64,000 bases of DNA from Macrostomum lignano (Eukaryota): assembly GCA_002269645.1 (NCBI GenBank), contig NIVC01002053.1, positions 99,837 to 163,836 of the forward strand. Direction: 5' to 3'. Positions 30,239 through 62,100 of the stretch are shown here, one piece after another (the stretch's first letter is position 1; each line of letters begins with the position of its first letter). The position numbers were made by a program, and so were the translations under genes. Below the pieces are notes generated by a model. The model saw only the letters and a program-made list of their open reading frames with translations. It searched no databases and had not been told where the DNA came from.

Positions 30239-32629
30239 ATGCAAAACCCAGCTTTCATCCATAATTTAAGCAAGAAAGTTCAGCAAATCCAAAGTAAAAT
30301 CACAGTAGAAACAAAAAACCCTCTCTGTTCAGCATTGCCACAATTTCTTAAAGACCTGAGAAATGCCACCAGGCATGCCAGCAGAAGATATAAGATGTTC
30401 CCCACAAGTAGCAACCTCGCATCCAAAATACAGCTTAAAAAAACATATGAAAAAAGCTTGATTTCTTGGAAACATGAATCAATACTGTGTGCAGAAAACA
30501 TGATCAACCAGGCTTATATTCAAAATGATACAAGACAGCTTTGGCAATTACTGAAACCACATAACCGCCCCAATAACAATGCAGCAATTGACGAAAAATT
30601 TGTCATACACTTTCAAAATCTTGTAACTGAACAAGACAGCAGCATTAGACTAGCATACAATCTTCACCTTGACAACCCTATTCTGACTAATTTAGAGGAT
30701 TTCAATGCCCCATTCACCAAAGAAGAAGTTATAAAACATATTAAAAAGCTCAAAACCGACAAAGCACCTGGGCATGATAAAGTATATGTAGAAACACTCA
30801 AATACCTTGAAAACGAACTTACTGACCTCCTATGCTCACTTTTCAACGAAGCACTCAAACAAGGAACCTTTCCAACTAGTTGGATTACAAATACTCTTCA
30901 TCCGATTTATAAAAACAAAGGCAGCAGTGCCGACCCCAACAATTACAGAGGAATCTGCATTCAACCAATTTTTGGCAAGCTCTTTTGCCAAATTATTAAA
31001 TCCAGACTTGAAAACCTAGCATACGCTAACAATCTTATATCAAAATACCAATACGGTTTCAAGCCCAATCACAGCACAATCGACCAATGTTTTAATCTTT
31101 ACAACATTATAAACCAGTCCATCTACAACAAAAATGAACTCTTTATCGGTTTTGTTGACTATGAAAAAGCCTTCGATAGCTTAAATCAACCGACCCTTTG
31201 GCACAAAACGGATAACCAAGGTATTAAAGGTCAAATGACAGAACTTATCAAGAACATGCATAAAAATGCCTGTTTCATTCTAAAGAAAGATGATGATGAT
31301 GATGAAACCCAGCCAATCCCAATATCTAAAGGTGTTCTTCAAGGTAACCCTCTCTCTACCATCCTTTTTGAACTATATATTGACGACATTGTTGAATATC
31401 TTGAACTCTCTAGCGCTAGGCGCTCTCTTACGAGATCTGCTTTCCCACTCATCCTGCTCTTTGCGGACGATCAAGCCATTCTAGCTAAAAACAAAGATGA
31501 ACTTCAAGACACATTTACAACTATGGAAAATTACTGCAAGCAAAACTACTTGAAAGTTAATGCAAGCAAAACAAAGTTTATGCAGGGCAGTACCAGACAA
31601 AAAAATGACACAGAAAGTTTTGCTACAAAAATAATCTACGACAACCAAGAAATAGAGGAAGTAAATGAATTTAAATACCTGGGAATTATTTTTGAACCAA
31701 AAAACAGCTTTAAAAAATGTATTGAACATCAAACTAAGCAGGGTTATTCAGCTATGTTTTCCCTACTCCACAAGGTAAAAAATACGTCCCTGGACATCAC
31801 ACTCATTCGCAGACTATTCGACGCGCTTGTCACCCCCGTTATCACGTACGGCTGTGAGCTCTGGGGCCCTCTGGCTACCATTTCTGAAACAAAAGCTATT
31901 GATAACATTCAGCTGAAATTCTACAAATATCTCCTCAATCTACCAAAATTTGCTAGCAACAGTGTGATATCATCAGAACTTGAGCTTACTCCAATCTCCC
32001 AACGAATTGCTAAAACCTATCTTACCTACTGGCTGAAGATTAGACATCAAAAACTTTGCCAAACGACACTAGAAATTTTCTACTCAAACACCAGCCAAAA
32101 AAATCCATGGAAAACAAATATACTAAAGAAACTGGAAAGTATAGACTTAAAAGCACTAACTGAAGATAAACTTTCCCAAAGCTTTAATAACGAGAAATAC
32201 CTAGTGAAAAAGCACCTCAAGATACACAGAGAAAGAGAACTTAGCCAAAAGCTAGAGAATCAGCAACATATTAAACTCTATAAAAACGCCTATCTCTACA
32301 AAAAAATCTGCAGGCCTGACCTTTCAGATTACTTTCCATGCACTTTTAGAAACAAAAAATTCCTAACAACCCTCCTAAAACTGAAATGCGAAATTACACC
32401 CAACATTTTCTCTCATGAACCATGTAGACTGTGTGGAGCGAGAAATGGTTCCGATATCCTACACTACTTGACCGAATGTCCACAAACCGAAAAGTTCAGA
32501 AAAAAATACTTCTGTCAGTACCTCCTAAATGACAAGCAAGTACACAAGTTAGGATATGCTACAAATGAAAAAAGAGTCAGAAAAGAGCTCACTGGTGTAG
32601 CTAAAATATATGAAGTCATGAATAGCTAA
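30239..32629 (+). mobile_element. intact 796-aa non-LTR reverse transcriptase ORF lacking an endonuclease domain
   Basis: KAPGHD, PIYKNKG..DPNNYRGI, QYGFKPNHST, FVDYEKAFDSL, GVLQGNPLSTILF, LLFADD, FKYLGI, LVTPVITYGCELWG and a C-terminal CRLC...H...C knuckle. In-frame stop at 30185; no APE motifs seen upstream. Confidence 0.92.
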
Positions 32630-36200: not shown

Positions 36201-39200
36201 AATCCTAACCTATTTAATAAACCAATTTTTAGTATGTCAACAGCAAACTGAGCCAGAAAATTCTCAAAGTTGCACAGGAGCAGCTGGCCGAAACTCGCCT
36301 GTAAGTTCAGTAAATAAAACTTGCTAAAATCAATCACCTGTCTAGATAAAAGCATTTCATTTTTATTTAGTCCAGTAAATTATAACTTAATAAACCTTTC
36401 TATGGAAGAAATCTAATGTAGGTCCAAATGTAGAATTTATAATGAAAGCTAAAATTGAGATATCAGTTTATCTGTTGAAACATCTTTCTTTCCTGGAAGA
36501 TTAACCAAATAGTCGTACTTTTGAGTAGCAACAGCAGAGTTTGATACTTCAAAAATTATATTCTACCATATGCACAGTTGTAGCTGTATTAGCAGTTTTT
36601 TTACTAGGCAGTGGCTTATTCTCACATATTTTTAACTGCCGTAGTCAGTCTATAATAGTTGTAGCCATGATTATTATGCATTAAATTAAGTTATTACTGT
36701 GAAACTAGGACTCTGGGTTTCATTCATCAAGAATGTAATGTCAGCTGGCATAATATACAGAAATCAATAGGATTAATAACAGTGCCACTTTTCCATATTC
36801 CCTTGAAATGTATAAGCAAAATTTAGCTTATTTAATTATATTATGTTTTAACTTTTTTCGTAGGTATTTTACACTGAAAAAATATTTTAGCGCCAGAACT
36901 AGATTTTAGCGCCTCAGTCTAGATTTTAGATAGGTTATAGGTATAGGTTAGATATATAGGTTAGGGTTAGAAAGTTGACAGATTTTTTTAGATTTCATGG
37001 CTTATGGGGAGCATCGCTGAGATGTCAAGGGGGGAAGTTGATATGTTAAAGCTTGTGGGGGGGGGAATAACTGACATGTCAAGGCTTACAAGGGACTGCT
37101 TTCAAAGCAGTATATTAATGCAGAGATATTGCAAAGAGATGCTACATGTAGCTTATTACAAAACTTGTACTGCATTTTTTGGCTCCCCAACGCTAAGATA
37201 CTAAGCTAAAAAATACTACTAGCGCTTCACAAACTTATGCAGATGTCAGGCTGTAGGGTTAGTGTTAGCGTTGGTGTTAGGGTATAGGGTTAGGGTTAGG
37301 GTTATAGCGTTAAGATTCGGGTTAGTGCTAGGGTTAGGGTAGCTTATAACTTAGCTCATGTAGCTTATTAAAAATGTTTATCATAGAAGCGTCATGCAAA
37401 AATAATGGAAGCGTCATGTGAAAAATAATGGAAGAGTCATGCAAAAAATCATAGAAGCATCATGCAAAAACTCATGGACAAAAGATTAAATTTAGGGTTA
37501 TGTTTAGGGTTAGGGTTAGGGCTATTAGAAGTTTTACAGGAGATTTTTTAAGATTTCAAGGCTACATGTAGCTTATTAAAAAACGTTTATTTCATTTCTT
37601 TAGCTCCCCAACGGGGGGCGTAGATTGCTAGTGCTAGCTCTTAGCGCTACAGTCTAGATCTTAGCGCTACAGGCTAGATTTTAGCGCCATAGACTAGACT
37701 TTAGCCCCACAGGCTAGCTTTTTGTGTTTTTGCACCTAGGAGAGATCTTTATTCATTCCTAGGGGGTCTTTGACCACCTTGACCTCCCCTTGATAATCCC
37801 TCATTGAGGTTAATCCTTATTTGAGGGAGAGCAGTTGGGGAGGGAATTGAGAATTAAATATTCTCAATCAAGCCTGTTGTTAATTCTCAAACAACAACAG
37901 ACAGCCGCAGTCTAAGCGAACCACAAAATCGGCGAGAGGCGGCGCATCAGCTTCGGCGAGAAAGTTCGCATCAACCGGTAGACGTCAGCGCGATGAAGCG
38001 GACAGCGACAGTGAGGACAGCGACGGCGGGGACGATGATAGTGAAGAAAGCGATAGCGACGGCGCAGACAACGCCGATGAAGGCGATGCAGGCGAGGCCG
38101 TTGATGCCAGCGCCGAGCTGGCCAATCAGCTGTACACGGATGAGGGCGGCCCGCTCGGCCAGCTGGACGCCGAACAGCTGCGCTCGTTGATCGCCGAGAA
38201 GCGAACAGAAATTGACGAAGAATTGGTGTCGGGCGTCGGCGGCGGCAGCGAGGCCGGTGCCAGCCGGGTCAGCAGCTGCTTGCCAGACTCGGTGCGGGAG
38301 CACTTCGAATCCTGCCGAGCTGTGCTCAGCCAGTACCGCAGCGGCAAGCTGCCCAAGCCTGTGAAACAGTTGCCGCATTTTTCTCAGTGGCAGGAACTGG
38401 TCGAACTGTTGGATCCAAACTCTTGGACTGCGGCGGCAATGTGCGCCGTTACTAAATACTTTGCCGCTAAAGGGAAGACGCAGGCTTTGCAATTCTTCCA
38501 GGTGAAAAATGATTCTTTTTCTTCGGATATATTGTACAAAGTCGTAGTGGCATTAGCTGTCTAATTGAATCGGTGTGCTTTTCTAATAGCAAGACAGCGT
38601 TGACGGCAGGGAGAAGGGCGCAAAGACTGAAGAAAGAAAGGCGGGGGGAGACGAGAAAGGTAAGAGGAGGGAAGAGATATGTGAGAGGGAAGAGAATGGC
38701 GCGAGAAAAGAGAAAAGCGAGAGGGGAGAGAGAAAGGTGAGAATGAGAAGAGGAGGGCGAGGAAAAGTGAGAGGTGAAGAGAAAGGCGAGAAGGGGCGAA
38801 GAAAAGCGAGAGGAGGGCGAGGAAAAGGGAGGGTAGGGTGAGGAAAGGCGAGAGAAGGAGAGAAAGGTGACATGGGGCGAAGAAAGACGAGAAGAGAGTG
38901 AGGAAAGGCAATTGGAGGTAGAGAAATGCGAGTTGTGGCTGTAGCCGGGAAATGAGAAGTGACAGTATCAGATATGACAAACTGAGAAGAAAAATATAGA
39001 AAAGAATACAAAAGATGTTTATCTTTTTACGTAGTGTAGCAGACTAGTCATTTTCACCATTGCTTTGTTAATATAGGTCTTATCGCACAACCCCTGACCC
39101 TCTCGCGCAGGGCTACTTGCTTCCCCGCTGTCGCGACGACATAGCCGAGTACAGGCGTCTTAACTTTCACTTGTACTCGGCGCTGCGCAAGGCACTGTTT

Positions 39201-39683
39201 AGGCAGCGGGAGTTTTTCTGCGGCTTACTGCTGCCCTGGGCTAGGGAGTCGATCTCCCTGCCGGAGGCTACGATCATTGGGGGCCTGTTGCGCCGGGTCA
39301 GCATCCCTGTGAAGTACGCCGCCCCGGCCCTGCACATGCTGCTGCAGCTGCCGTACAGCGGCGGCCGGGCCATTCTGATCCGGGTGCTGCTGGAAAAGAA
39401 ATATAACCTACCGGATCCTGTGCTTGGCCAGGCTTTGGCTCATTTTGTTGCTATGGAAACAGATTCGGCCGATCACCTGAACGAGGACGGTCGGCTGCCG
39501 GTGCTTTGGCACCAGGCTCTGCTGGCGCTGGTTGAACGCTACGGCGACTACTTGAGCGGCGACGAGCGGCAGCGCCTGTTGCGGCTGTGCCGGCAGCACC
39601 AGCATCCGGAGATAACGCCGGCTGTGCGACAGGCTCTCGGGGCGCTGCAACAGCGTGACGCCAGAATGGAGACTGCCGACTAG
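33224..39683 (+). CDS. BYSL: Bystin (40S ribosome biogenesis factor, Enp1 homolog), ~458 aa
   Basis: Exons 33224-33358, 36233-36300, 37901-38501, 39111-39683 with consistent phases. Motifs PSLADDI, YVNSKLSQKILKVAQEQ, YRSGKLPKPVKQLP, WTAAAM..VTKYF, LLPRCRDDIAEYRRLNFHLY, LLEKKYNLP and LPVLWHQALL. Confidence 0.95.
35205..35483. mobile_element. 279-bp non-autonomous TIR element (MITE) with 8-bp TSD, carrying a 28S rRNA-like fragment
   Basis: TIRs ccctattgcagcgcatgg / ccatgcgctgcaatcagg. ATTTGGGT is duplicated at 35197-35204 and 35484-35491. 35314-35377 resembles 28S GGGTAAACGGCGGGAGTAACTATGACTCTCTTAAGGTAGCCAAATGCCTCGTCATCTAATTAGT. Confidence 0.8.
36870..37730. repeat. dispersed repeat element with TTAGGG-like tracts and short internal tandem repeats (bystin intron 2)
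   Basis: (gggtta)n patches at 36935-36970, 37255-37340 and 37490-37522; tagattttagcgcc repeats at both ends; gaagcgtcatg repeats. Partial copy at ~43240-43490. Confidence 0.7.
38600..39000. repeat. GA-rich low-complexity tract in bystin intron 3
   Basis: Purine-only runs; the ORFs called here are low-complexity artefacts. Confidence 0.8.
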
Positions 39684-41010: not shown

Positions 41011-41787
41011 AAGACATTCTACAAGACACACCTAAACCATCAGAAGCTGTCTATCTAGCATATGAGAGGTCCATAAATCAGAAATCGGTGTATTTGCAAT
41101 CTAATTACAAAAGGATTGATAGCAAACCTGACTGGCAACGCGCTTACCGCTTTTGCTAGATGTATACTCAACAACATTAGTATACACTTATTACTGAATA
41201 TGATTGCGCAGTAAATTCTAATTGACTTGCGCCACGCAACGCAGAATTGGGCTGGGTGTAGAGGGATTGGGAAGAGCGGAAGGCAAAGATTAGATGGATT
41301 GAATCTTCCGCCCGGTTTTCATTGTTTTTTCTAGCATTTTTTAATATCAATACGCTCGTAGTTGGCAAGGTGATAGACGCTGGTCGAAGACACTGCTCAC
41401 TGGGGCAAAGGGTGGCAAATTTTCAATGTTGCTGAGTATATCTAATTTAATGGGTTAGTTCTTGCTGCATTATTGAGATTAAAAATTTCCATAACCACCA
41501 TTTTGCATTCTTCATCACATCGAACCGCACAAATGAATAAATACATGTCTACAATTGCCAAGCCTGCTAGTTGAATCTCGGTCAAGTCTGCATGAATTTC
41601 TCCTCTGGAGGGTTTGGGTGGCAATAAGAGAACTCTCGCCCTACCTATAGTCTTAAGCAACATTGATGGCTTCAGCCAATCCGAGCAAGAAAAGAGCGGT
41701 GCGCATAGATGTTAAAAACGATAGGGCTGATCCTCTAAGTCTAGGATTGATGGAAAAAGTCAAGCACTCAGATTCCAAAACTGCGTA

Positions 41788-42618
41788 ATGGAGAAACCAA
41801 TACCTATCGCTAAAAGTGGGACACACGACGATCTCAGCACAAGTGGGTGCCGGCAGCAGCAATGCAAACAGCATAACGTGCTCCATCAAGACCAACAATA
41901 TCCGCATCTGCTCTTACCGTGCGAGCAGGAGTCGAACGAGCAGCGGCAGGTGACGCACAAGACTAAGCACATGATGGCTAAGCGGAACGCCAGGGAGAGG
42001 CAGCGCGTCAAGGCTGTAAATTTGGCTTTTAGTAGACTTAGAAGGTAGGATCGATAGTACGGCAATCGTTCCGTGTACGTGTTGCATGTTAGTGCTGATG
42101 CGAATATACAAATGTTTGAATGACGGTGCGTGTTTTGAGTGCATCTTATAGTGTGATAAAATTTCTTGGCTAAAAGCATCTCATTTAGGGTATTCTGGTG
42201 ACCGGCTTGAAAACTAGTTTAATGAAGTGAGACACACAAGTGTCACAAACGAAGGGACATTAAAGCACTGCATAATCAGACACTACAAAAACGGGACCTG
42301 CATGCAGGGAATGGCATATTGAAAGGATCTGAAGGGACCTGCATGCAGGGAATGACATGAAAGAATTGGAAGGGAAACGCACAGTCCTCATGCTGAACCC
42401 GCAGGCACATCCCGTACGAGAACAAGGGAAAGCGGCTATCCAAGATGAAGACGCTGCGCATAGCCATAGACTACATCCGGCTGCTGCAGTCGGTGCTAGG
42501 CGAGCTGGACTCCGGTGTTAGCCCGGGCAGCAGTGCCAGCTACCGGGCGCTGCTGGCGCTGGCGCGGAGCAAAGAGGCGCCGCCCTGTTTTATTTGGCAC
42601 GGCGGCGGCAACGTTTGA
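41788..42618 (+). CDS. achaete-scute-like bHLH transcription factor, ~156 aa
   Basis: Exons 41788-42044 and 42405-42618 (phase 2) join to give AKRNARERQRVKAVNLAFSRLRRHIPYENKGKRLSKMKTLRIAIDYIRLLQSVL. The RNARER.RV basic region is ASC-type. Confidence 0.85.
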
Positions 42619-43239
42619 GAAACACTGAAGCGTGTTGAAGCGGTTAACACTGGATTTTAGTGTACATACGAGCGTATCATATAGTCATGGCTTGAAATAG
42701 TAACAAAAATCGTTACAATGCACACATGTATCACTCATTAACAGCATCGGTTTATTGAACGTTAAATGCATGAATAAATGTGCAGTGCATGCATGTACGC
42801 GCGGGTTAAAAATCAGCATAGACTACTACACTTTAATCTGAATTAAACGGAACTTTAATGAACGTACAGTTAGTCTAGCGGTGAAGGTTATTCCGTCTAT
42901 CCTACCAGCCAAGAGATAAGAGACACACCCTTGGTGATTTGGGATGAATATACTTATAATCATTAAATTGTGTTCGGTCTTAACGATCCATGCAGTGTCC
43001 AGACCGCTGCACATTGTTGTTGTCGGTGTGCATGAGTCTTCTCTAGTGCCCTTTAAGGCGTTAAGGCTGAACTATATGTGCTACAATTCATGTTATTGAA
43101 CAGATGAAAGCTAGCCTAGACGTGAACAGACTGAACTGCTAATGCAGCGACGTGGGTTCGAATCATAAGAGTGTAATTTTTTTATTTAAAGCTTTTTTAA
43201 TGTCCAGAAAACTTAATAGAACTTAATGTGAAAAATAAA

Positions 43240-43490: not shown

Positions 43491-43959
43491 GCATATTCAA
43501 AACTTTATTAGTTGAGTACCTTCATTGTCATTCGATGAAAGTTCTATAGTGCGGAAATTTCCAAATCACGCCATCCTGCAGCGGCACCCTTTAGCTGCCA
43601 GCTACTTACTTGTTGTGCAGGTCGAAGTGGGCTATAGTACTACTGCACTGAAGGAAAATGAGTGCATCAAATTTGCATCCAATTAGAGTTTGGATGACAC
43701 ATTGGGGTGGGGTGACACATCCAAAGGGAGCGCATAAAAATGGGGTAAAAGGGGTGCTCAGAAAGGTATTTAAAAGCCGACAGCCGCGCCCTGATGCTCA
43801 GCAGATAGCTTTCGCAAGCAATAAAAACTGGTTGAAACTTCACTGTATACCTTGTACAGGCCAGACGGTAAGCATTCTGGTTTATAACTGTATGAGCTAA
43901 ATATGCCAAATCTCAAACTTTTTCTCGGAAACTTGTTTTTCAGAAAGCAAATCTTCCCG

Positions 43960-45565
43960 ATGGTCCGCTGGGTCCCAATCCTCGTACTGCTGTGCGCCAT
44001 CCTGCACGCTATGCGGCCCGTGACCGCGGCTGTGGACCAAACTCTGCAGCCGAAAGCTAAAGGGGCCGACGTGGTCCGAGCCACAGTTCGCAAGATCCGC
44101 AACAGCTGCATCTTTCCCAACGACTTAGGATTTCTATTGCGCGTCGCATATGTGGAGTCGAAATTCGGCCTCAACGCCAACACGTTTCGTTCCGACGCTG
44201 ATGGTTTTGGCAAAGGCATCTGGCAGTTGGACAAGATCGGCTTCGACGACACCAAACTCGGAAGCAGTACAAAAAGAAACTTGGTGAAGGAGAAGTTCGG
44301 AATTGACTGGACAACTATGACATACGCATCCGCTAACATGAACGTGCCGCTCTACAACGCTCTTGCTGCGCGACTGCTGCTCTCTCGAAAACCGGAGGCG
44401 ATTCCACCTGGCATTGAAGCGCAGGCCGACTATTGGAAGACCTATTACAACAGTGGCGCTGGCAAAGGCTCTGTAGATAAATTTATCAACGACGTCAAGA
44501 GCATACAGCCTTGCAGTACCGTTGGTGCCGACCTGCTATTCATCCTGGACGCTAGCGGCAGCATCGGATCCAGCAACTTTCAGCTCATGAAGCAGGTGCT
44601 GATTGCAGTTGCTAATAAATTATCGATTGGTCCCGCGGCTACGCAGGTGGCTGTGATCACGTTTTCCAGCCGAATAAATGAGACGATCGAATTTGGCCAA
44701 CATTCAACACTGAGCTCTTTGACTTCGGCCATTCAAGCGCTGTCATACGTAGGCGGAGGCACGTACACAAACCTGGCATTGGATCTCGTAGGATCCACGT
44801 TCCAGTCTGCTAGACCTCTGAAGGAAGGCTTTCCCCGGCTGCTTATCGTGCTGACAGACGGTGGATCGAGTGACCGTGAAGCCACTCGCCTGGCCGCGAA
44901 CAGACTGAATGCGTACAGCTGGCTTGAGCGCTACGCCGTTGCCGTTGCCGTTGGAAACCATTGCGTCATGCTCGCACGTTTATATTATACAATCTGTCAG
45001 CGCTATCACCGGCCTGACGGACGATCTTTACGAGCTCGCCTGCCAATCGTCGGTTGCGCTGCCTACGGACAATGCCGGCTTCGCAACCATGTCTGGAACG
45101 CTCCCACCGGGCACGCCTCGGAATGTGCGCGACACGGCGGTCTCTAGCGCTATCGGAAGAACCTACGCTCTGCAAGTGATTTCCGGTCGAGCTAATCTCT
45201 ACGTGTCCCTCGGCATGGAGAACCCGAGCTCCGCTGTCAATGACTACTCAGCGGAGGCGACGCCAAGCCGATTGGGAGTCGTGTTTGTCAGCTCCGCAGA
45301 CCTGGCAGCCTCGTCCGCTCCGCTGAGCAGGCGCAAACGTGAGCTGTCCAGCAGCAGCAGCAGCAGCAGCTCCAGTACCGTTCTGTACCTGTCGATTGTA
45401 CCCGAAGAAGACAGCGGGTCGGTGATGTACACGCTCGAAGCTCGCGATGGCGACACTCGCTCGCTTTATCAGAATTCGATCGCCGGCGGGCCAACATTGC
45501 TGCACTGGCCGAAGCTGGCTCTGCTCGCGGCCATGGCGATTGGCGCGATGGCGCTGTTTGATTGA
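43960..45565 (+). CDS. signal peptide + GH23/lysozyme-like domain + VWA domain + C-terminal domain + hydrophobic (GPI-like) tail; frameshift at ~44951-44958
   Basis: Signal MVRWVPILVLLCAILHAMRPVTA follows a 5'UTR intron (~43868-43943). VAYVESKFG, GKGIWQLDK and YWKTYYNSGAG mark the lysozyme-like domain. The VWA has MIDAS DASGS, VAVITFS, GGTYT..AL, VLTDG and YAVAVG, then continues in another frame as LETIASCSHVY. Ends LALLAAMAIGAMALFD. Confidence 0.85.
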
Positions 45566-46681
45566 GTCGCTTCAACTGGAAAGTGACAAGTGACGCTGTT
45601 TATACTTTAACTTTAATATTCCAGAAAAATTAGCCACACGTACTTTTATCGCAAACTAACACTAAGCTTGTTATTCAGATGAAAACTTAGCAACAGAACT
45701 AACAAAAAACTAACACAAGTGCCCGTATTTTCTCATAGCTGCGACGACAGCCGACCCGCAGCCAGCCAGAAAGAGCAGAAGACATGCCCATTTTCCTCTG
45801 ACTAAATTTTTCATTATATATATTTTTTTTCAAAATTCTCCACGAACTCTAAAACAAATATTTGCTTTCGGTTTCTAACATTTACTTTTCCAAATTTTTT
45901 AACACTGCTTTACGAATCTTATTAAAACAAAGCGAACGCAGAAAATATTTAAACTTTATTTTTTTATTGACGCAAAAATTAAACTAAGCAAAAATGTACT
46001 GCACCTAATTTTTCATATTTAAAAAGAAACAATGAATAAATATATGAATGAATGTATTTTGGGATTAGAAAAGTATTGCACCTTACCAAATAATGCTTTT
46101 TATAAATATCGGGAATCAACGGAAATAGACGCACTCGTGCACTTTTACACGCGTGAGCAAAAAGAAGAATGACTAACCCTCACTATGCAGGAACAAAAGC
46201 TCAAATTATCATGTACCTTACATACTCGTACATGTATACATATTGCTGTGCTTAAATTATTTTAACATAGCATATGGACAATCATCTCCAATGCAAGTCC
46301 TACATGAAGGTATTAAAAAATGCCAACTGGTAAACACACAATACTAATTACTTTCGAAACATATCGGCAATAATAACCATGTTCCTTTCTGCAGTACTGC
46401 ACTTCACTTAGATGCAGGGAATGAAATTCGGAAATCGCTGACAAGAAAACTTCTGTACAGTGCGACAGGAAAATATCTACTTTCGATACATATCGTCATT
46501 TACCTATGTTAATTCTACACCCACGAGTAGGTCTTAACTGCTACATATACATACGATGTAATTTAGCTTACAATGGCCGTCCGGAAAATCAATCCAAAAT
46601 AGGAGCTACAACTACTGTCTGAAAATTTCCAGAATAAATAATTTCGATACATATCGGCGAGCAATAAAAATCGCCTCAATT

Positions 46682-49600
46682 TTATACTAGATGCTCACAC
46701 ACGCAATAGGTCCTGAAAATCAGACAGCAAAGTTGACTAAGCGCAACGCAGATAATTTGACTGTCCTCCGCCATTCGGTCCAGCAGGCGGCGCAGCCCGG
46801 CCTCCGTCAGGCCCGGGTAGCAGCCGCGCCGCTCCCTCCGCAGCCGGCCCAGCAAGGCCAGCTCACTGACTCCGCCGCCGCTGCCCGTAGGAGCCGCCGC
46901 CGACGCCATCGACGCCGATGCTCCACCTCCTTCTGTTGAAGCGTCTCGCAGATGGCGCAGCGTCGCCACAATGTCCGCCCGAAGTCTCGAGTCGGCCTCG
47001 CACAGCTGGTACTGCTGGCGGCCAGTGTCCTCGCATAGCCAGGCCCGCAGCTGGCCGGATGCGACCAGCGGATCCAGCAGCCCCGACTTGATCGCCTGCT
47101 TGGTGCCAATCGACGACAGCCAGTTGGCGCTGAGCAGCAGATCCGGCAGAGTGAACTGGTGCAACCGGTGCGCGCGCAGGTGCTCAACCAGGCGCTCCTG
47201 AGACTGAGTCTCCTGGGAGATTGTGTTTTCGTTATTGAAACAGACTTTAAATCAGTTAGAGTTGCTTGTTTGGCGATAAATTAAAATAGAAAACTGAGAA
47301 TCCGAATTAAGGCTTCGACGTGTTATGAATTTCTGTACACTAAAGCCTAACCTCCTCTAACCTCAACACCCAGCTTATTTCTGTGTTTCATCAGAGAATA
47401 CACTTACTGCATTTGTTACATTTTAATGTCGAAAAAGTTGCATAATAATGCCCGATACATACGGTACAGCCGGGGCGTCGCCACAAAGGGAAAGGGGACA
47501 TGTCCATGTCTTCATGTCTTCAGGACGCCAAAATGAGTGCCTGCGGTGCCAAAATGAGTGCCTGCGGCGCCAAAATGAGTGCCTGCGGCGCTAAAATGAG
47601 TGCCTGCGGCGCTAAAATGAGTGTTTGCGGCGCCAAAATGAGTGCCTGCGGCGCTAAAATGAGTGCCTGCGGCGCCTAAATGAGTGTCTGCGGCGCCAAA
47701 ATGAGTGCCTGCGGCGCTAAAATGAGTGCCTGCGGCGCCTAAATGAGTGACTGCGGCGCCTAAATGAGTGTCTGCGGCGCCAAAATGAGTGCCTGCGGCG
47801 CCTAAATGAGTGTCTGCGGCGCCAAAATGAGTGCCTGCGGCGCTAAAATGAGTGCCTGCGGCGCCTAAATGAGTGCTAACAACACCAATTCCCAAAATAA
47901 TGTAGGAATTTTTTCATGTAGAATTCCTGACATTGTCCCCCATCATAAAAGCCGTTTTGATGGTTCCAGGCTAATTAGTAAATGTGACGAGGTTTTGTTC
48001 GAAATTTAAATTCATATTGGCTTCTCCGTTGCGTTAATTTCGGCCCTGTAATCTGATTTGATAGCCTGTCTACTAACGGTAGTATATACCGGTATGGAGA
48101 TACGCAGCTATACATGTGAGCGAAGCGGCATCACAACGTTTTCGCATCTCTTTCACTCTGTAGTAACGGAAAAAGACTTAGGTTCGATTTTATTGAGAAG
48201 CCAATAATGCTGCAAGTATTGTATAAGCGAATGCAACTCAGCGGCAAACGCGTTCCACTTTCGCGCATCTCTTCGTCCAATTCTCTCCTATTAGGGCTCG
48301 CCCCGAAGGCACAGAGCGTGTGTGCTGAATAGCCTTAGCGTTGGCGTTGTGACAGGATGCCCGCAACCCTCCTGCGAGCATTCATGTACATGTATATTTA
48401 TCTACAGGCCGAGTTCTCACTCACCCGGTGCCTGGCCGCCTCAGCCAGGCGAACCTGCCTGCTCAGCCCGTCGGGCAGCCGCAGCCGCAGGATGTAGCCA
48501 AACTGGCAGCTCGGATCGGCCAGCTGGGCCAGCCTGCTCAGCCTGAGCAGCTCCTCGTCAGGCTCGGCCATCCGATGATAGCCGCAGCTGAGCTCCCGGC
48601 TGCCGCGGAATTCCCGCACCAGGCCCCTGGCGTGCAGGCTGAGGCCCGGCCTGGGCGCCGGCTGGGCCGCCTCGGCCGCCTGCGTCTCCGCTAGCAGCAG
48701 CTCAGCCAGGCTGTCCTCAGCACCCAGCGTTGTCAGGCCGGCCAGCGCGGCTGTTGCGACGGCGCTGCTATCGCCGTAGGAACTGCCAGTCGTGGTTGCT
48801 ATGGCAACCGCGTCGAGCTGCCTGGCCGCTCGGAAACTGTGCAGCGACGGCGGCGGCGGCTGCCGCGGCTTCCACAGGGTGCAGCCGATTGAGCCGGTAC
48901 CGTCGTCAACTGCAAGGAGGAAGATGGGACGACTGCACTCAGATACTGGCAGTTTGGGAAGGGGGGCAGGGAATGATTCAGATAGGGCTGATGGCCAACT
49001 CCTAATCCTCAGTGAGTCGCTACGATCACATGACCCTTTAGTGAGTCGCTACGATCACATGACACTTTAGTGAGTCGCTACGATCACATGACACTTCAGT
49101 GAGTCGCTACGATCACATGACACTTTAGTGAGTCGCTACGATCACATGACACTTCAGTGAGTCGCTACGATCACATGACCCTTTAGTGAGTCGCTACGAT
49201 CACATGACACTTTAGTGAGTCGCTACGATCACATGACCCTTCAGTGAGTCGCTACGATCACATGACCCTTCAGTGAGTCGCTACGATCACATGACACTTT
49301 AGTGAGTCGCTACGATCACATGACACTTTAGTGAGTCGCTACGATCACATGACACTTTAGTGAGTCGCTACGATCACATGACACTTCAGTGAGTCGCTAC
49401 GATCACATGACCCTTCAGTGAGTCGCTACAATCACATGACCCTTCAGTGAGTCGCTACAATCACATGACACTTCAGTGAGTCGCACCTACCCTCAATATT
49501 TCAGTGAACCGCAACTATGCCAAGATGAATCAGGGAAGTCGCCACTATCCCCTGACACTAGTGGGCTGCCACTATTCCGTGAATCAGAAAGCAGCAACTA

Positions 49601-51065
49601 CACCAACTACTAACAAGTAGCATAACTACGAGTAGCAAAAAAGTATCTTTAACAGTAAATCCAAATTGAACGTGAGACAGGGCAGAGGTGTGCACTATTA
49701 TTGCTAATTATTAAAACTCAGCTGTGCGGGTGTGGCACAAAAACTTCGCTCACATCTGGTTTGGCCCCACCGCCCCCCCCCCTAGTCCGCGCGAACTCAC
49801 CCAAGCACTTGAAGTAACCGTCAAACTCCGTAGCCGAACGGCACAGCCCGATGACGTCAAACTTTCTGACCAGCTTTCTGCCTACTCGATATGAGACTCC
49901 GCCGTCTATAGCGGGTAGATGGAGAGATGGAAAGAGATAGGAATTACATAATGAGTAAACAATTTTCTCTTAAAGCAAGCGGAGCTTTTAAAAAGAGCGC
50001 GGCGGAGGAAGAGACTGATATTTGGAGGGCAAGAAAACTTTTTGGAGAAGTACTTTTAACTTTCTAAGCTAGAGATAGTCAACAATAAGTAGCTGTTTGA
50101 TAAGCTTGCTGAGCAGGTGAGATAGAGTGACAGCGGCGACAGGTAAAAGACTGGTAGATGGCGTAGAAGAGTAAGTGCGACAGGTAGAAGGTGTACAAGA
50201 GCAAGGAAGACAGGTAGAGGGCACAGAAGAGAGAGGGAGACAGGTAGAGGGTACAGAAGAGAGAGGGAGACAGGTAGAGGGCACAGAAGAGAGAGGGAGA
50301 CAGGTAGATGACGCAGAAGAGAGAGGGAGCCAGGTAGAGAGCACAGAAGAGAGAGGGAGACAGGTAGATGGCGCAGAAGAGAGGGAGACAGGTAGAGAGC
50401 ACAGAAGAGAGAGGGAGACAGGTAGATGGCGCAGAAGAGAGGGAGACAGGTAGAGGGCACAGAAGAGAGAGGGAGACAGGTAGAGGGCACAGAAGAGAGA
50501 GGGAGCCAGGTACATGGCGCAGAAGAGAGAGGGAGACAGGTAGAGGGCTTAGAAGAGAGAGGGAGACAGGTAGAGGGCTTAGAAGAGAGAGGGAGACAGG
50601 TAGAGGGTACAGAAGAGAGAGGGAGACAGGTAGAGGGCACAGAAGAGAGAGGGAGACAGGTAGAGGGTACAGAAGAGAGAGGGAGACAGGTAGAGGGCAC
50701 AGAAGAGAGAGGGAGACAGGTACATGGCGCAGAAGAGAGAGGGAACCAGGCAGAGGGCTTAGAAGAGACTGCTTGTCACGCCGGCTGCGGGTCAACTTTC
50801 GCCTCGATTTTCTATAGAGCCTAAAGCCCACACTGAAAGCTAAAAAGCGAAGAGACAGACGGATAGATGGCGCATAGAAACTCCAAAAAAACGAGCTAAA
50901 AAGTCTATAATGCCATTAGGCACGCCGCTAGCACTCACCGGGAGTGGACACAGCAGGTGCACTCAAGATGGCGCCAATGCAGATTGGCAGGTGCTGGCAG
51001 CAGGCTGGATCCAGCTGGGCCGCCTGCTGCTCCGCTGTAGGCTGGCCGTCATTGCCCAGCTGCAT
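46682..51065 (-). CDS. STN1: CST complex subunit STN1 (OB fold + C-terminal winged helices), ~415 aa
   Basis: Exons 51065-50939, 49905-49801, 48909-48425, 47212-46682 with consistent phases. LDPACCQHLPICIGAIL, FDVIGL, VDDGTGSIGCTLWK, ARGLVREFRGSREL and PGLTEAGLRRLLDRMAEDSQII parallel human STN1 (LDPVF, VDVLG, VDDSTGVINCICWK, PGLSEAVLQQVLELLEDQSDIV). An alternative in-frame ATG lies at 51143. Confidence 0.85.
47525..47875. repeat. 21-bp minisatellite in STN1 intron 3
   Basis: Unit aaaatgagtgcctgcggcgcc. Confidence 0.95.
49010..49485. repeat. 29-bp minisatellite in STN1 intron 2
   Basis: Unit agtgagtcgctacgatcacatgacacttt. Confidence 0.95.
50170..50765. repeat. 30-bp purine-rich minisatellite in STN1 intron 1
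   Basis: Unit agaagagagagggagacaggtagagggcac. Confidence 0.95.
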
Positions 51066-59169: not shown

Positions 59170-62100
59170 TCACTTAACAGCCCAAGAGCAGGTGGGATTA
59201 ATCTTGAGCAGGTAATAAATCTGTGTGTTACCGGGCAGCCGGCGCTCATTGATGTTGCCGCCAACCTCGTACAGGGAGGTGGTGGAGGGGTCGCAGCCCA
59301 GCCCGTGAAGAACTTCGGCAGCGGTGGTGGACGGCGAGATTGGAACCAGCTGGCTGCGGTTGGTGCTGGCCTGGTGAACACTGATGCTTACCTTGGTGAG
59401 AGGGGGTGAAGTGGTCAGGTATGGGAAGTTGCTTGATTAGCGCCGAAGTGTGCAGGAGTGGGCAAGCGGCCTACTTTTACTAAAGGCTGTTAGTGAATTT
59501 GGGAGGCTACTGAAGGATCTGAGAGGCTACTAAAATCTGACGGGCTGTTGAAGGATCTGATGAACAGATAAGTTTAGATCTATTTATAGATCTAAAAGGG
59601 GTCACTAAAAACAGGGATTAGATTACTGAATTAGGATCAGATAAGACAGCTGAAGTATCGGATGAGACAGCTGAAGTATCGGATGGGACAGCTGAAGTAT
59701 CGGATAAGACAGCTGAAGTATCGGATGAGACAGCTGAAGTATCGGATGGGACAGCTGAAGTATCGGATAAGACAGCTGATGTATTGGATGGGGCAGCTGA
59801 AGTATCGGATAAGACAGCTGAAGTATCGGATGGGACAGCTGAAGTATCGGATGGGACAGCTGAAGTATCGGATGGGGCAGCTGAAGTATCGGATAAGACA
59901 GCTGATGTATTGGATGGGGCAGCTGAAGTATCGGATGAGACAGCTGAAGTATCGGATGGGACAGCTGAAGTATCGGATGAGACAGCTGAAGTATCGGATG
60001 GGACAGCTGAAGTATCGGATGGGGCAGCTGAAGTATCGGATGGGACAGCTGAAGTATCGGATGAGACAGCTGAAGTATCGGATGGGGCAGCTGAAGTATC
60101 GGATGAGACAGCTGAAGTATCGGATGGGACAGCTGAAGTATCGGATGAGACAGCTGAAGTATCGGATGGGACAGCTGAAGTATCGGATGAGACAGCTGAA
60201 GTATCGGATGGGACAGCTGAAGTATCGGATGGGACAGCTGAAGTATCGGATGGGACAGCTGAAGTATCGGATGAGACAGCTGAAGTATCGGATGGGACAG
60301 CTGAAGTATCGGATGAGACAGCTGAAGTATCGGATGGGACAGCTGAAGTATCGGATGGGACAGCTGAAGTATCGGATGAGACAGCTGAAGTATCGGATGG
60401 GACAGCTGAAGTATCGGATGGGACAACATGCGACAACTCACCTGCTGGTTTTGGATCGATGTCGCAGAAGTTGAGCTGTTAAACACCGGACTGTCAACAA
60501 CTGCAGCTGCCAGAGAGGATACGGGCGTTTTTGCTGCAGCAGCAGCTGCCTGCTTGCGCAACAGTTTGGCCGCCTTCTTGGCGCTGCTGGCGCCGCCGCC
60601 GCCGCTGGTGCTGGCAAGCTGGCTTAATTTATTAGGCGGCTCGCGCAACTGTTTAATTAGAAACTCTGGCACGCTCCACACTATGGTGCGATATTTAATG
60701 AGCATCTCAACTAATCCGATTAGATTGCCAGTCTCAGCCAACAGATTGGCGCCTTCTCGTTGCGCTTTCTTCGAAGATTGAATGGCGAATAAATTTGGCG
60801 CCATGACGGTTGCTATGGCTTTCAGATTCATTCGATTGTGCTTGTGCTGCTCGATTACCTGACAGAGGGTGAATTGTGTGTGGGAGATCGAATATCATAC
60901 TGATTAAGCTGAAGCTCAACTTACACAGGACTTCGCGCCGATGGGCTAGGGAGGGAGCGGGTAAGATAGAGAATAGCTGGGGCAGGGAGTAGGGAGAGAA
61001 TAGCTGGGGCAGGGGGTAGGGAGAGAATAGCTGGGGCAGGGGGTAAGGGAGAGAATAGCTTGGGTAGGGGTAAGGGAGAATAGCTGGGGCAGAGGGTAAG
61101 GGAGAGAATAACTGGGGCAGAGGGTAAGGGAGAGAATAGGTGGGGCAGGGGATAGGGAGAGAATAGCTGGGGCAGGGGGTAGGGAGAGAATAGCTGGGGC
61201 AGGGGGTAAGGGAGAGAATAGCTGGGGCAGGGGGTAGGGAGAGAATAGCTGGGGCAGGGGGTAAGGGAGAGAATAGCTGGGGCAGGGGGTAAGGGAGAGA
61301 ATAGCTGGGGCAGGGGGTAGGGAGAGAATAGCTGGGGCAGGGGTAAGGGAGAGAAAACAGGCAAAGAAAACTTGGGGTGGTTGAATATAGAGACCCAATT
61401 TCAAATCACGATATGTGGAAAAAAACTCTACACTAAAACTTAGGGTTGAAAAAAAACAATCAAGAAATGCGCAAATCATTTTCATGAGACAGACGCGCAC
61501 CTTAGCAAACAAGTCGACCATCAGGCGCAGCGTGCTACAATTAGGCGTTGGCAACAGCAGCACAAGCAGATTAAGGCCTAACAATCTGTCCATATCGTGC
61601 TGAATACAGCGCAGTTTTAAATAGAAATCTGCATAGGCTGTTGAAGTCAGCGGCTCGGGCAGCTCACGCAGGAAGGCCTTCAACAGGCCGGCTAGGTCGT
61701 GCCAGTCAGCGGTCAGACGCTGATGCTGCTGCTCGGTGTCGGCCATCAGCGCCTTGATGCCGGCTGACTCGGCCCGCTCCCTGGCCTGGCGGATTCTCTG
61801 CAGCGAGCCGGGGACGCGGAACAGGCCTTCGGTGCGCAGCGCTTCCGGCCGTTCAAGCTGACCGACAATCCAGCGGACCAGCTGAGGCACCCCGTCGCTA
61901 CTGGAGCTGCCGCTCTCCTTAGCAACCAGCTGGTCAAGCGGCACGCCGAAACAGCTGGCAACAACAGAGCGCCGCGAAGCCGACCGGCCGCGTGACGACG
62001 GCTTCCTAAACGCCGGATCGCAGTCGTATTTATCGAACAGGGCGGCCAGCTCCAGGTGGGCCAGAGCTCGAATCTGCTGCCTATCTGGCTCGCTGAAATC

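What the first reader, a model, noticed from the sequence alone, without database searches (positions are those of the whole stretch)
43960..45565. Surface-anchored lysozyme/lytic-transglycosylase-like + VWA protein
The N-terminal ~160 aa show the four GH23/SLT-type motifs in order: AYVES.FG with a putative catalytic Glu (codon 44155), G.GIWQLDK (compare g-type lysozyme GLMQVDK), P.YN..AA..L and YYNSGAG. YWK.YYN...GKG also recalls uncharacterised phage/bacterial lysozyme-fold proteins. It is fused to a MIDAS-intact VWA adhesion domain, a further domain and a GPI-like tail, with no intron in the coding sequence. This suggests a membrane- or mucus-tethered peptidoglycan-cleaving or sensing protein for antibacterial defence or microbiome control, possibly with a horizontally acquired catalytic domain. 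I know of no characterised protein with this architecture.
Basis: partly seen in the sequence, partly recalled or inferred. Interest (0 to 1): 0.8.

Follow-up and report, generated by a model that had tools for sequence, protein, structure and literature searches.

The report
Frameshifted flatworm lysozyme-like VWA surface gene
This flatworm gene encodes a surface-tethered protein whose first domain belongs to an undescribed lysozyme-like family shared by bacteriophage lysis proteins and many marine invertebrates, but this copy is broken by a 20-base frameshift.

Summary
The N-terminal 162 residues (44029-44514) belong to a large family with no Pfam entry: 1198 cluster representatives, and PHROG 3108 in phages.

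- The proposed catalytic Glu (codon 44155-44157) is kept in 148 of 156 members aligned (about 95%).
- The AlphaFold model is confident, and its structural neighbours are lysozyme-superfamily proteins, though weakly.
- Profile comparison lines the Glu-Ser and GIWQ motifs up with the catalytic motifs of E. coli SLT lytic transglycosylases.
- In phages the domain sits in the endolysin slot next to holin and spanin, or at the end of internal virion proteins.

The VWA domain, its MIDAS motif and the GPI-like tail are also confirmed.

The order lysozyme-like domain, VWA, beta-sandwich, hydrophobic tail recurs in molluscs, brachiopods, echinoderms and a mite. None of these proteins is characterised.

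Compared with an intact paralogue in Macrostomum lignano (545 aa, 95% identical over the N-terminal 318 residues searched), the window has a net 20-base deletion at a (GCCGTT)3 repeat (44935-44952). This shifts the frame inside the VWA domain.

The likely function is cleavage of bacterial cell-wall peptidoglycan at the animal's surface. No activity has been tested.

The parts
43930..43941 (+). cttgtttttcag, a possible 3' splice or trans-splice acceptor just upstream of the start codon
   Evidence: Read from the sequence. It is conserved in paralogue L001, whereas the upstream ATG at 43903 is not. Its function is inferred only.
43960..44028 (+). Start codon and 23-residue signal peptide (MVRWVPILVLLCAILHAMRPVTA)
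   Evidence: Hydrophobic core followed by V-T-A. The annotated paralogue P0001 starts at the same Met. No signal-peptide predictor was available.
44029..44514 (+). Lysozyme-like N-terminal domain (162 aa): PHROG 3108 family, distantly SLT/GH23-like
   Evidence: 1198 representatives at E<=1e-3. PHROG 3108 at E 1.5e-18. AF2 pLDDT 91.5. Foldseek neighbours are lysozyme-superfamily proteins. hhalign against an SLT profile gives E 2.6e-4.
44155..44157 (+). Codon of the putative catalytic Glu (Glu66 of the precursor), followed by Ser
   Evidence: Invariant in 27/27 and present in 148/156. It aligns with the catalytic Glu-Ser of EtgA and of MltE and the SLT profile. It lies at the end of helix 35-44 in the model.
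44215..44235 (+). GIWQLDK motif, equivalent to SLT motif II (GLMQ)
   Evidence: Aligned to GIMQ of EtgA and to GLMQ of the SLT profile. E. coli MltD itself reads GIWQ.
44530..45040 (+). VWA domain, split between frame 1 (to about 44950) and frame 2 (from 44951)
   Evidence: PF00092 at E 1.2e-29, covering profile positions 1-140 of 174 in frame 1. The remainder (LETIASCSHVYIIQSVSAITGL...) is in frame 2 and matches the paralogue, which covers 172 of 174.
44548..44562 (+). MIDAS motif D-A-S-G-S. The Thr and Asp partners lie within 44752-44769 and 44851-44874.
   Evidence: Read from the translation. DxSGS is present in 30 of 36 tri-domain homologues.
44935..44952 (+). (GCCGTT)3 repeat marking a net 20-nt deletion, which causes the frameshift
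   Evidence: Pairwise DNA alignment with paralogous locus L001. The only other indel in the coding sequence is 12 nt and in frame, at 45364.
45145..45147 (+). Premature stop of the shifted frame 1, after about 64 out-of-frame residues
   Evidence: the ORF listing and translation.
45038..45454 (+). C-terminal beta-sandwich domain (frame 2)
   Evidence: Found after the VWA domain in 36 non-redundant homologues by iterated HMM search. AF2 shows a beta-sandwich, pLDDT 72 overall and 80-92 in the strands. No Pfam match.
45329..45340 (+). RRKR, a furin-type dibasic site in a disordered loop, followed by poly-Ser (45347-45376)
   Evidence: The loop has pLDDT below 50. RxK/RR occurs at the same loop in 8 of 36 homologues from different phyla.
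45473..45562 (+). GPI-signal-like C terminus: NSIAGG (candidate attachment site), spacer PTLLHWP, hydrophobic KLALLAAMAIGAMALFD
   Evidence: Hydropathy scan. Of the 20 homologues that end soon after the C-domain, 14 have the same kind of tail.
45563..45565 (+). Natural stop codon (TGA), shared with the paralogue

Best explanation
The interval is a frameshifted duplicate of a Macrostomum lignano gene.

The intact form, paralogue BOX15_Mlig019589g1, encodes a secreted and probably GPI-anchored protein built in this order:
- signal peptide
- a lysozyme-like glycosidase domain
- a VWA domain with an intact MIDAS site
- a beta-sandwich domain carrying a furin-type site in an exposed loop
- a hydrophobic C-terminal tail

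The N-terminal domain belongs to an unannotated branch of the lysozyme superfamily. Phages use this branch as an endolysin and as a virion-borne wall-piercing domain (PHROG 3108).

Inferred mechanism: Glu66, at the end of a helix, acts as the general acid that cleaves the MurNAc-GlcNAc bond of peptidoglycan. Asp91 in GIWQLD may position a water molecule, as in goose-type lysozymes. The VWA domain would tether or cluster the enzyme through metal-dependent binding. The beta-sandwich would act as a stalk. Furin cleavage could release or mature the ectodomain.

In the window copy, a 20-nt deletion shifts the frame inside the VWA domain. At best it could make a truncated, unanchored protein with the lysozyme-like domain, most of the VWA domain and a nonsense tail.

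Shown here: homology, conservation, predicted fold class, phage gene context, and the frameshift.

Inferred: enzyme activity, substrate, anchoring, processing and biological role.
For: Identity and genomic setting
- P0001 from M. lignano is 95% identical.
- The locus is collinear with L001 over 8.5 kb.
- The neighbours are eukaryotic genes: Bystin, RhoGAP and retrotransposons.

Family
- 1198 representatives.
- PHROG 3108 at E 1.5e-18.
- 21 phage records by tblastn.
- BFVD phage protein at TM 0.83, E 1.7e-7.

Lysozyme-like nature
- Glu is invariant or present in about 95% of members.
- The model is confident and all-alpha with a small hairpin.
- Seven of the top eight PDB hits are lysozyme-superfamily enzymes, mostly wall-degrading: GH23 chitinase (two chains), Slt, MltE, phiKZ gp144, a GH73-type hydrolase and GH19; the eighth is a GH124 cellulase.
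- The viral hits are muramidases, SLT and LT_GEWL proteins.
- The family profile hits EtgA at the catalytic motif.
- hhalign against five E. coli SLT domains gives E 2.6e-4 and probability 42%. All four motifs fall in order in the extended alignment.
- Pfam SLT is the only family hit repeatedly, in 6 of 45 members, best E 0.002.

Phage function context
- In Klebsiella phage VLCpiS6a the homologue is directly followed by a holin (phrog_785) and an Rz-like spanin (phrog_89).
- phiKO2 Gp54 lies between small Gp53 and the overlapping pair Gp55/56.
- P0142 follows the capsid and nozzle genes in a podophage-like contig.
- The N terminus of P0056 matches 'internal virion protein'.

Architecture
-.

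Frameshift
-.
Against: - No match to Pfam SLT reaches the curated threshold, and the window protein itself gives none.
- No solved structure matches by sequence.
- Foldseek matches to PDB lysozymes are individually insignificant: E 0.36-5, TM 0.37-0.47.
- The best PDB hit is a chitinase, so the substrate could be chitin.
- PHROG 3108 is itself annotated 'unknown function', and no member has been assayed.
- GPI anchoring rests on hydropathy only.
- dN/dS after the frameshift (0.45) is no higher than before it (0.35-0.46). The lesion is therefore recent, or possibly an assembly artefact, in which case the gene would be intact.
Confidence: 0.7

Rival explanations
1. The window copy is intact in the animal, and the 20-nt lesion is an assembly or consensus error. 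The gene would then encode the full anchored protein, like its paralogue.
For: - Frame 2 stays open for 218 codons to the natural stop.
- It is 87% identical to the paralogue.
- dN/dS downstream (0.45) equals the upstream value.
Against: - The lesion is a complex event: 32 nt are replaced by two extra GCCGTT units. That is not a homopolymer-type sequencing error.
- Duplicate decay is expected in this highly duplicated genome (my own knowledge of M. lignano, not tested here).
Confidence: 0.2
2. The lysozyme-like domain of the animal proteins no longer cleaves anything. It serves as a glycan-binding module for peptidoglycan or chitin in a matrix, adhesion or pattern-recognition protein, with the VWA domain doing the main job.
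For: - VWA proteins of invertebrates are often matrix or adhesive proteins.
- 3 of 49 VWA-fused members have lost the Glu.
- Asp68 is present in only 32 of 49.
Against: - Glu is retained in 46 of 49 VWA-fused members.
- The whole motif set (G47, G63, W65, P107, W136, Y140) is as conserved in animals as in phages. This argues for retained catalysis.
Confidence: 0.15
3. The domain is an active glycosidase, but in animals its substrate is chitin or another GlcNAc polymer rather than bacterial peptidoglycan. It would, for example, remodel chitinous structures or digest food.
For: - The best PDB structural neighbour is the GH23 chitinase of Ralstonia sp. A-471.
- Many phyla that carry the family make chitin (my own knowledge).
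Against: - Phage members sit in lysis cassettes and virion proteins, where the substrate is peptidoglycan.
- Animal and phage domains are up to 49% identical.
Confidence: 0.1
4. The sequence is phage or bacterial contamination in the assembly rather than an animal gene.
For: - The domain matches a phage family.
- The coding sequence has no intron.
Against: - It is fused in frame to a eukaryote-type VWA domain, with a signal peptide and a GPI-type tail.
- It is flanked by Bystin, RhoGAP and retrotransposon sequences.
- A collinear second locus exists in the M. lignano assembly.
- A homologue in another animal has a spliceosomal intron at the domain junction.
Confidence: 0.01

Closest known systems
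SLT / GH23 lytic transglycosylases and goose-type lysozymes (Pfam PF01464; E. coli MltE, MltD, Slt70; EPEC EtgA)
   Same: - Small, mostly helical domain.
- Catalytic Glu-Ser at the end of a helix.
- G-(L/I)-(M/W)-Q motif about 20 residues later; MltD even reads GIWQ.
- A later helix beginning with Pro, and a Y-N-x-G motif in the same order.
- Structural neighbours in Foldseek.
   Different: - No hit reaches the Pfam gathering score.
- Profile-profile probability is only 42%.
- TM to solved GH23 structures is about 0.45.
- There is an extra conserved N-terminal helix and an 'FGIDW' segment.
- The family has its own strongly conserved residues: W94, P126, Q132, W136.
PHROG 3108 phage proteins (e.g. 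Klebsiella phage phiKO2 Gp54, VLCpiS6a gp66; C-terminal domains of podophage internal virion proteins)
   Same: - The same domain family by sequence (E 1.5e-18).
- Same length.
- Same conserved Glu and motifs.
   Different: - The phage members are standalone proteins of about 150-165 aa in lysis cassettes, or the ends of proteins of 800-1300 aa injected with the DNA.
- The flatworm protein is a secreted eukaryotic fusion with VWA, a beta-sandwich and an anchor signal.
- PHROG lists the family as 'unknown function'.
Antibacterial genes that animals acquired from bacteria or phages (GH23 g-type lysozyme, PMC12855814; from memory: GH25 muramidases, Tae/Dae amidases, phage-type lysozymes of bivalves)
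   Same: A wall-degrading domain shared between phages or bacteria and scattered animal phyla, and then domesticated with a signal peptide.
   Different: - This is a different domain family.
- The direction and number of transfers are not resolved here. An unsupported NJ tree places the phage-like sequences basally.
- It is fused to adhesion-type domains.
CLCA-type and anthrax-toxin-receptor-type VWA surface proteins (analogy, from memory)
   Same: An extracellular hydrolase or ligand-binding head, then a VWA domain with MIDAS, then a beta-rich domain, with proteolytic processing and a membrane anchor.
   Different: There is no sequence relationship outside the VWA domain, and the head domain is a glycosidase-like fold rather than a metalloprotease.
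PliG, periplasmic inhibitor of g-type lysozyme (for the C-terminal domain only)
   Same: Best Foldseek PDB match of the C-domain model, with three orthologues among the top hits (E 2e-3, TM 0.60-0.65 on the target).
   Different: - No sequence similarity (hhalign probability 0.7%).
- The model has only medium confidence.
- Many unrelated jelly-roll and cupin folds score almost as well.

Membership tests
Pfam SLT (PF01464) / CAZy GH23 | Match to the curated family model above its gathering score | tested here: not met
   The window protein gives no hit at E<=1. P0005 gives E 0.1. Six of 45 family members give sub-threshold hits, best E 0.002.
Pfam SLT (PF01464) / CAZy GH23 | Catalytic Glu (usually Glu-Ser) at the C-terminal end of a helix | tested here: met
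   VES at 44152-44160. Glu is present in 148 of 156 members. It lies at the end of helix 35-44 in the AF2 model. It aligns to the catalytic Glu of EtgA and MltE.
Pfam SLT (PF01464) / CAZy GH23 | Motif II G-L-M-Q about 20 residues after the Glu | tested here: met
   GIWQ aligns to GIMQ and GLMQ. MltD has GIWQ.
Pfam SLT (PF01464) / CAZy GH23 | Motifs III and IV (helix after Pro/Asn; A-Y-N-x-G) in order | tested here: inconclusive
   They line up only in the low-confidence extension of the hhalign alignment.
Lysozyme-like superfamily | Lysozyme-like fold | tested here: inconclusive
   Seven of the top eight PDB hits, and most of the top 15, are lysozyme-superfamily enzymes, but with E 0.36-5 and TM 0.37-0.47. 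The viral library gives SLT, LT_GEWL, muramidase and endolysin models below the true family members.
Lysozyme-like superfamily | Cleavage of peptidoglycan or chitin glycosidic bonds | not testable with these tools
   This needs an enzyme assay.
PHROG 3108 | Significant match to the family HMM over its length | tested here: met
   E 1.5e-18, profile positions 30-154 of 160.
Phage endolysin (as a functional class, for the phage members) | Gene adjacent to holin and spanin genes | tested here: met
   In VLCpiS6a the order is homologue, holin (phrog_785), Rz-like spanin (phrog_89). phiKO2 Gp54 lies between Gp53 and the overlapping Gp55/56. Other phages show unannotated small neighbours.
VWA domain (PF00092) | Match above the gathering score | tested here: met
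   104.2 bits against a cut-off of 23.8.
VWA domain (PF00092) | MIDAS residues DxSxS...T...D | tested here: met
   DASGS, GGGTYT and LTDGG are present.
VWA domain (PF00092) | Complete domain in one reading frame | tested here: not met
   Frame 1 covers profile positions 1-140 of 174 and the rest is in frame 2. There is a net 20-nt deletion relative to the paralogue.
GPI-anchored protein | N-terminal signal peptide, plus a C-terminal small-residue site, a spacer and a terminal hydrophobic stretch | tested here: inconclusive
   The sequence pattern and hydropathy fit, and the tail recurs in 14 of 20 short homologues. No GPI predictor or experiment was available.
Metazoan tri-domain family (lysozyme-like + VWA + beta-sandwich; unnamed) | All three domains in this order | tested here: met
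   Window frames 1 and 2 together show this order, and 36 non-redundant representatives share it, including Haliotis, Batillaria, Lingula, Acanthaster, Amphiura and Halotydeus.
PliG (C-terminal domain) | Sequence-profile similarity to PliG | tested here: not met
   hhalign probability 0.7%. There is fold resemblance only.

The most novel reading that the evidence does not exclude
Animals possess a further, so far unrecognised type of lysozyme. It would be related to a phage endolysin and virion-lysin family (PHROG 3108) and was probably exchanged with phages early in animal evolution.

In many invertebrate phyla it would be deployed as a membrane-tethered module: enzyme, VWA, beta-sandwich, GPI anchor. 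Secreted single-domain forms occur in corals.

A more speculative extension: the PliG-like beta-sandwich holds the enzyme in check until furin cuts its exposed loop.
Probability: 0.4. Interest if true: 0.8.

Novelty: new variant of a known kind. Interest (0 to 1): 0.62.

Why it matters
The recognised animal lysozyme types are few: c, g, i, and some phage- or GH25-type acquisitions. A further family of more than a thousand sequence clusters, shared with phage lysis and DNA-injection proteins, would add a new element to invertebrate antibacterial defence or microbiome control.

It would also give a function to a phage family now labelled unknown. That family is a new endolysin type found in Klebsiella, Vibrio and Shewanella phages. 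It offers another case for studying gene exchange between phages and animals.

The conserved fusion to a MIDAS-bearing VWA domain and an anchor suggests a way of keeping a wall-cutting enzyme at the epithelial surface. This can be tested directly in the genetically tractable flatworm M. lignano.

Tried and rejected
Searches that gave nothing:
- Single-sequence search of the N-domain against PDB sequences: no hit.
- NCBIfam: no hit.
- Literature searches for the family or the architecture. Only the g-type lysozyme HGT paper (PMC12855814) was relevant as background, and it does not mention this family.

Comparisons that were weak or spurious:
- hhalign of the family profile against the single Slt70 C-terminal sequence gave a spurious alignment away from the catalytic Glu.
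- Against MltE alone, the alignment fell on the right motif but with probability 1.4%.
- I replaced both with a five-sequence SLT profile.

C-domain:
- The profile search of the large protein database timed out once, probably because of the poly-Ser words.
- The retry found nothing at E<=1e-3.
- The C-domain model therefore rests on only three sequences.
- The PDB sequence search gave only noise.
- Pfam gave no recurrent family.
- The PliG sequence comparison was negative.

Other attempts:
Bacterial and prophage distribution was therefore not surveyed.
- An 88-nt GT..AG interval (44913-45000) would also restore the frame. I considered it and rejected it as an intron: it would delete conserved VWA strands, and the paralogue reads straight through the same DNA.
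- The ends of contig L012 show no poly-A tail or leader, so they give no evidence of transcription.
Full report
**What is in the sequence**

The window is eukaryotic DNA. It carries retrotransposon reverse-transcriptase ORFs, minisatellites, and exons of Bystin, a RhoGAP protein and a HAP1/TRAK-like protein.

The best database match of the gene is a 545-aa hypothetical VWFA protein of the flatworm Macrostomum lignano (P0001, BOX15_Mlig019589g1). It is 95% identical over the first 318 residues.

The locus that encodes P0001 (L001) is collinear with window 40.6-49.1 kb. Identity is 96-97% in the flanks and 91.6% across the gene. The two are therefore duplicated or homeologous copies.

**The reading frame is broken**

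- An upstream in-frame ATG at 43903 is not conserved in the paralogue.
- The interval is not one ORF. Frame 1 runs from 43960 to a stop at 45145-45147, and the C-terminal third of the protein is in frame 2.
- DNA alignment with L001 shows why. The paralogue encodes Y-A-V-G-M-E-S-D-V-N-H-D-E-L-E-T-I-A-S. The window reads TAC GCC GTT GCC GTT GCC GTT G GAA ACC ATT, that is (GCCGTT)3 at 44935-44952, a net loss of 20 nt.
- The only other indel in the coding sequence is 12 nt and in frame, in a poly-Ser loop.
- A GT..AG interval at 44913-45000 would also restore the frame. It would remove conserved VWA strands, and the paralogue reads through the same DNA, so I reject it as an intron.
- dN/dS between the copies is 0.35-0.46 in every part, including 0.45 downstream of the shift. 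The lesion is therefore recent or, less likely, an assembly fault.

**The N-terminal domain (44029-44514)**

It has no Pfam, NCBIfam or PDB sequence match. It is nevertheless a member of a very large family.

- An exhaustive HMMER search found 1198 cluster representatives at E<=1e-3 and 442 at E<=1e-10.
- The proposed catalytic Glu (codon 44155-44157) is invariant in 27 of 27 close homologues and present in 148 of 156 of a wider set.
- By group, the Glu is present in 46 of 49 VWA-fused animal proteins and in 10 of 10 phage-like proteins.
- G47, G63, W65, Q66, P107, P126, W136 and Y140 are almost as constant.

**Predicted fold**

- An AlphaFold2 model built on 27 sequences is confident: pLDDT 91.5, pTM 0.88. 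It is mostly helical, with a small hairpin right after the Glu, and the Glu ends helix 35-44.
- Against the PDB, the best Foldseek hits are a GH23 chitinase, Slt, MltE, phiKZ gp144, a GH124 cellulase, a GH73-type peptidoglycan hydrolase and a GH19 chitinase. Hen lysozyme and leech destabilase follow within the top 12.
- All of these are lysozyme-superfamily enzymes, but each match is weak: E 0.36-5, TM 0.37-0.47.
- Against predicted viral structures, the top hit is a 1021-aa protein of an uncultured tailed phage (TM 0.83, E 1.7e-7).
- Four small viral proteins come next, and then a long list of SLT, LT_GEWL, muramidase, endolysin and tape-measure lysin models.

**Sequence-profile evidence for a link to SLT**

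- The family profile's only near-hit in PDB sequences is EtgA, a type III secretion peptidoglycan hydrolase. VES aligns on its catalytic NES, and GIWQ on GIMQ (E 0.17).
- I built a profile from the catalytic domains of E. coli MltE, Slt70, MltD, MltC and MltF. hhalign against it gives E 2.6e-4 and probability 42% over the Glu-Ser to GLMQ segment.
- Pfam SLT is the only family that recurs among 45 members, in 6 hits with best E 0.002, all below threshold.
- I conclude that the domain is a new family of the lysozyme superfamily. It is probably a distant relative of GH23 and not a member by curated criteria.

**Phage context**

- The domain matches PHROG 3108 ('unknown function') at E 1.5e-18.
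- tblastn finds it in 21 phage records, from Klebsiella, Vibrio, Shewanella, Pseudoalteromonas, Salmonella and Pseudomonas phages.
- In Klebsiella phage VLCpiS6a, the 165-aa homologue is immediately followed by a holin (phrog_785) and an Rz-like spanin (phrog_89). That is the endolysin position of a lysis cassette.
- phiKO2 Gp54 lies between a 101-aa protein and an overlapping gene pair of the spanin type. A survey of spanins (PMC6139136) lists phiKO2 as having a two-component spanin.
- In metagenomic phage contigs the domain forms the C-terminal end of very large proteins.
  - P0142 (1279 aa) follows the capsid and nozzle genes, the place of internal virion proteins in T7-like phages.
  - The N terminus of P0056 matches the PHROG 'internal virion protein'. 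Its C-terminal domain is 49% identical to the flatworm domain.
- Both settings are ones in which phages use peptidoglycan-cleaving domains.

**The rest of the protein**

- The VWA domain is solid: PF00092 at 104 bits. In the paralogue it is complete, covering 172 of 174 profile positions. The MIDAS residues are present.
- A third domain of about 140 residues follows. Iterated HMM searches find it after the VWA domain in 36 non-redundant homologues.
- Those with names come from Haliotis, Batillaria, Lingula, Acanthaster, Amphiura and the mite Halotydeus. They are annotated as 'uncharacterized' or, misleadingly, as collagens.
- Corals (Montipora) have short secreted single-domain forms.
- The C-domain model is a beta-sandwich of medium confidence: pLDDT 72 overall, with the strands at 80-92.
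- Its best PDB neighbours are PliG proteins, which are inhibitors of g-type lysozyme (E 2e-3, TM 0.60-0.65 on the target). Many generic jelly-roll and cupin folds follow closely.
- There is no sequence similarity to PliG. I treat the resemblance as a curiosity.
- A disordered loop carries RRKR (45329-45340) followed by poly-Ser. An RxK/RR site occurs in the same loop in 8 of 36 homologues.
- The protein ends with NSIAGG, a short spacer and a 17-residue hydrophobic tail.
- Of the 20 homologues that end soon after this domain, 14 have the same kind of tail. This fits a GPI-attachment signal, although no predictor was available.

**Evolution**

- A neighbour-joining tree of 156 domains has no support values. 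It places the phage and phage-like sequences in basal groups and all VWA-fused proteins in one large derived group together with short secreted forms.
- This is compatible with an old transfer between phages and animals but does not prove it.
- The flatworm coding sequence has no intron.
- The homologue P0004, from an unidentified eukaryote assembly, contains a 96-nt GT..AG intron that the ORF caller read through. It lies exactly between the lysozyme-like and VWA domains (L013 6533-6628).

**Verdict**

Three corrections are needed:
- This copy is frameshifted.
- The domain is a separate family rather than a GH23 member.
- The architecture is widespread, though uncharacterised.

Enzyme activity, substrate, anchoring, processing and biological role remain inferences.

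Noticed in passing
window 43766-45664 compared with flanks 41225-42622 and 46741-49136: Between the two duplicated loci, the gene is more diverged (91.6% identity) than its flanks (96-97%). Synonymous divergence rises along the gene: dS is 0.04 in the lysozyme-like part, 0.10 in the VWA domain and 0.15 in the 3' part. I have no explanation; relaxed constraint, diversifying selection or patchy gene conversion are possible.
   Followed up: partly
window 45329-45376: There is a furin-type RRKR site followed by a poly-Ser run in a loop of the C-terminal domain predicted to be disordered. Dibasic sites recur at the same loop in homologues from other phyla.
   Followed up: partly
window 45038-45454 (model m2ee26e71dc80): The beta-sandwich domain's best structural matches are PliG proteins, the bacterial inhibitors of goose-type lysozyme. 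This is odd next to a lysozyme-like domain. The match is marginal and has no sequence support.
   Followed up: partly
L013 6533-6628: Homologue P0004, from an unidentified eukaryote assembly, has a 96-nt GT..AG intron in frame, exactly at the junction of the lysozyme-like and VWA domains. The ORF caller read through it.
   Followed up: partly
L002 1890-13556: A marine metagenome contig with podophage gene order: capsid, nozzle, then a 151-aa, a 1279-aa and a 1195-aa protein. The 1279-aa protein ends in the same lysozyme-like domain.
   Followed up: partly
P0024, P0025, P0036, P0069 (representative proteins): Some family members consist of two or three tandem copies of the lysozyme-like domain with no VWA domain. 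Their organisms are unknown.
   Followed up: no
window 30239-32629: An uninterrupted 796-aa reverse-transcriptase ORF (RVT_1, E 7e-31) lies in an AT-rich block (about 33% G+C, 30-37 kb). It looks like a young non-LTR retrotransposon. A second, GC-rich element with RVT_1 and RNase H fragments lies at 641-2767.
   Followed up: partly
window 15286-16277, 21017-21926, 50056-50831, 59618-60831: Long minisatellite arrays give open reading frames in several frames on both strands, for example the repeated SDTSAVP unit at 59.6-60.8 kb. These ORFs are probably not genes.
   Followed up: no
window 39117-39683, 17351-17755, 60946-61944: Exons of ordinary eukaryotic genes: Bystin (E 1e-53), a HAP1_N/TRAK-like protein and a RhoGAP domain protein. 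They confirm the chromosomal context.
   Followed up: partly
window 43930-43941: A pyrimidine-rich tract ending in CAG lies 18 nt upstream of the start codon and is conserved in the paralogue. It is a possible acceptor for a 5'-UTR intron or a spliced leader.
   Followed up: no
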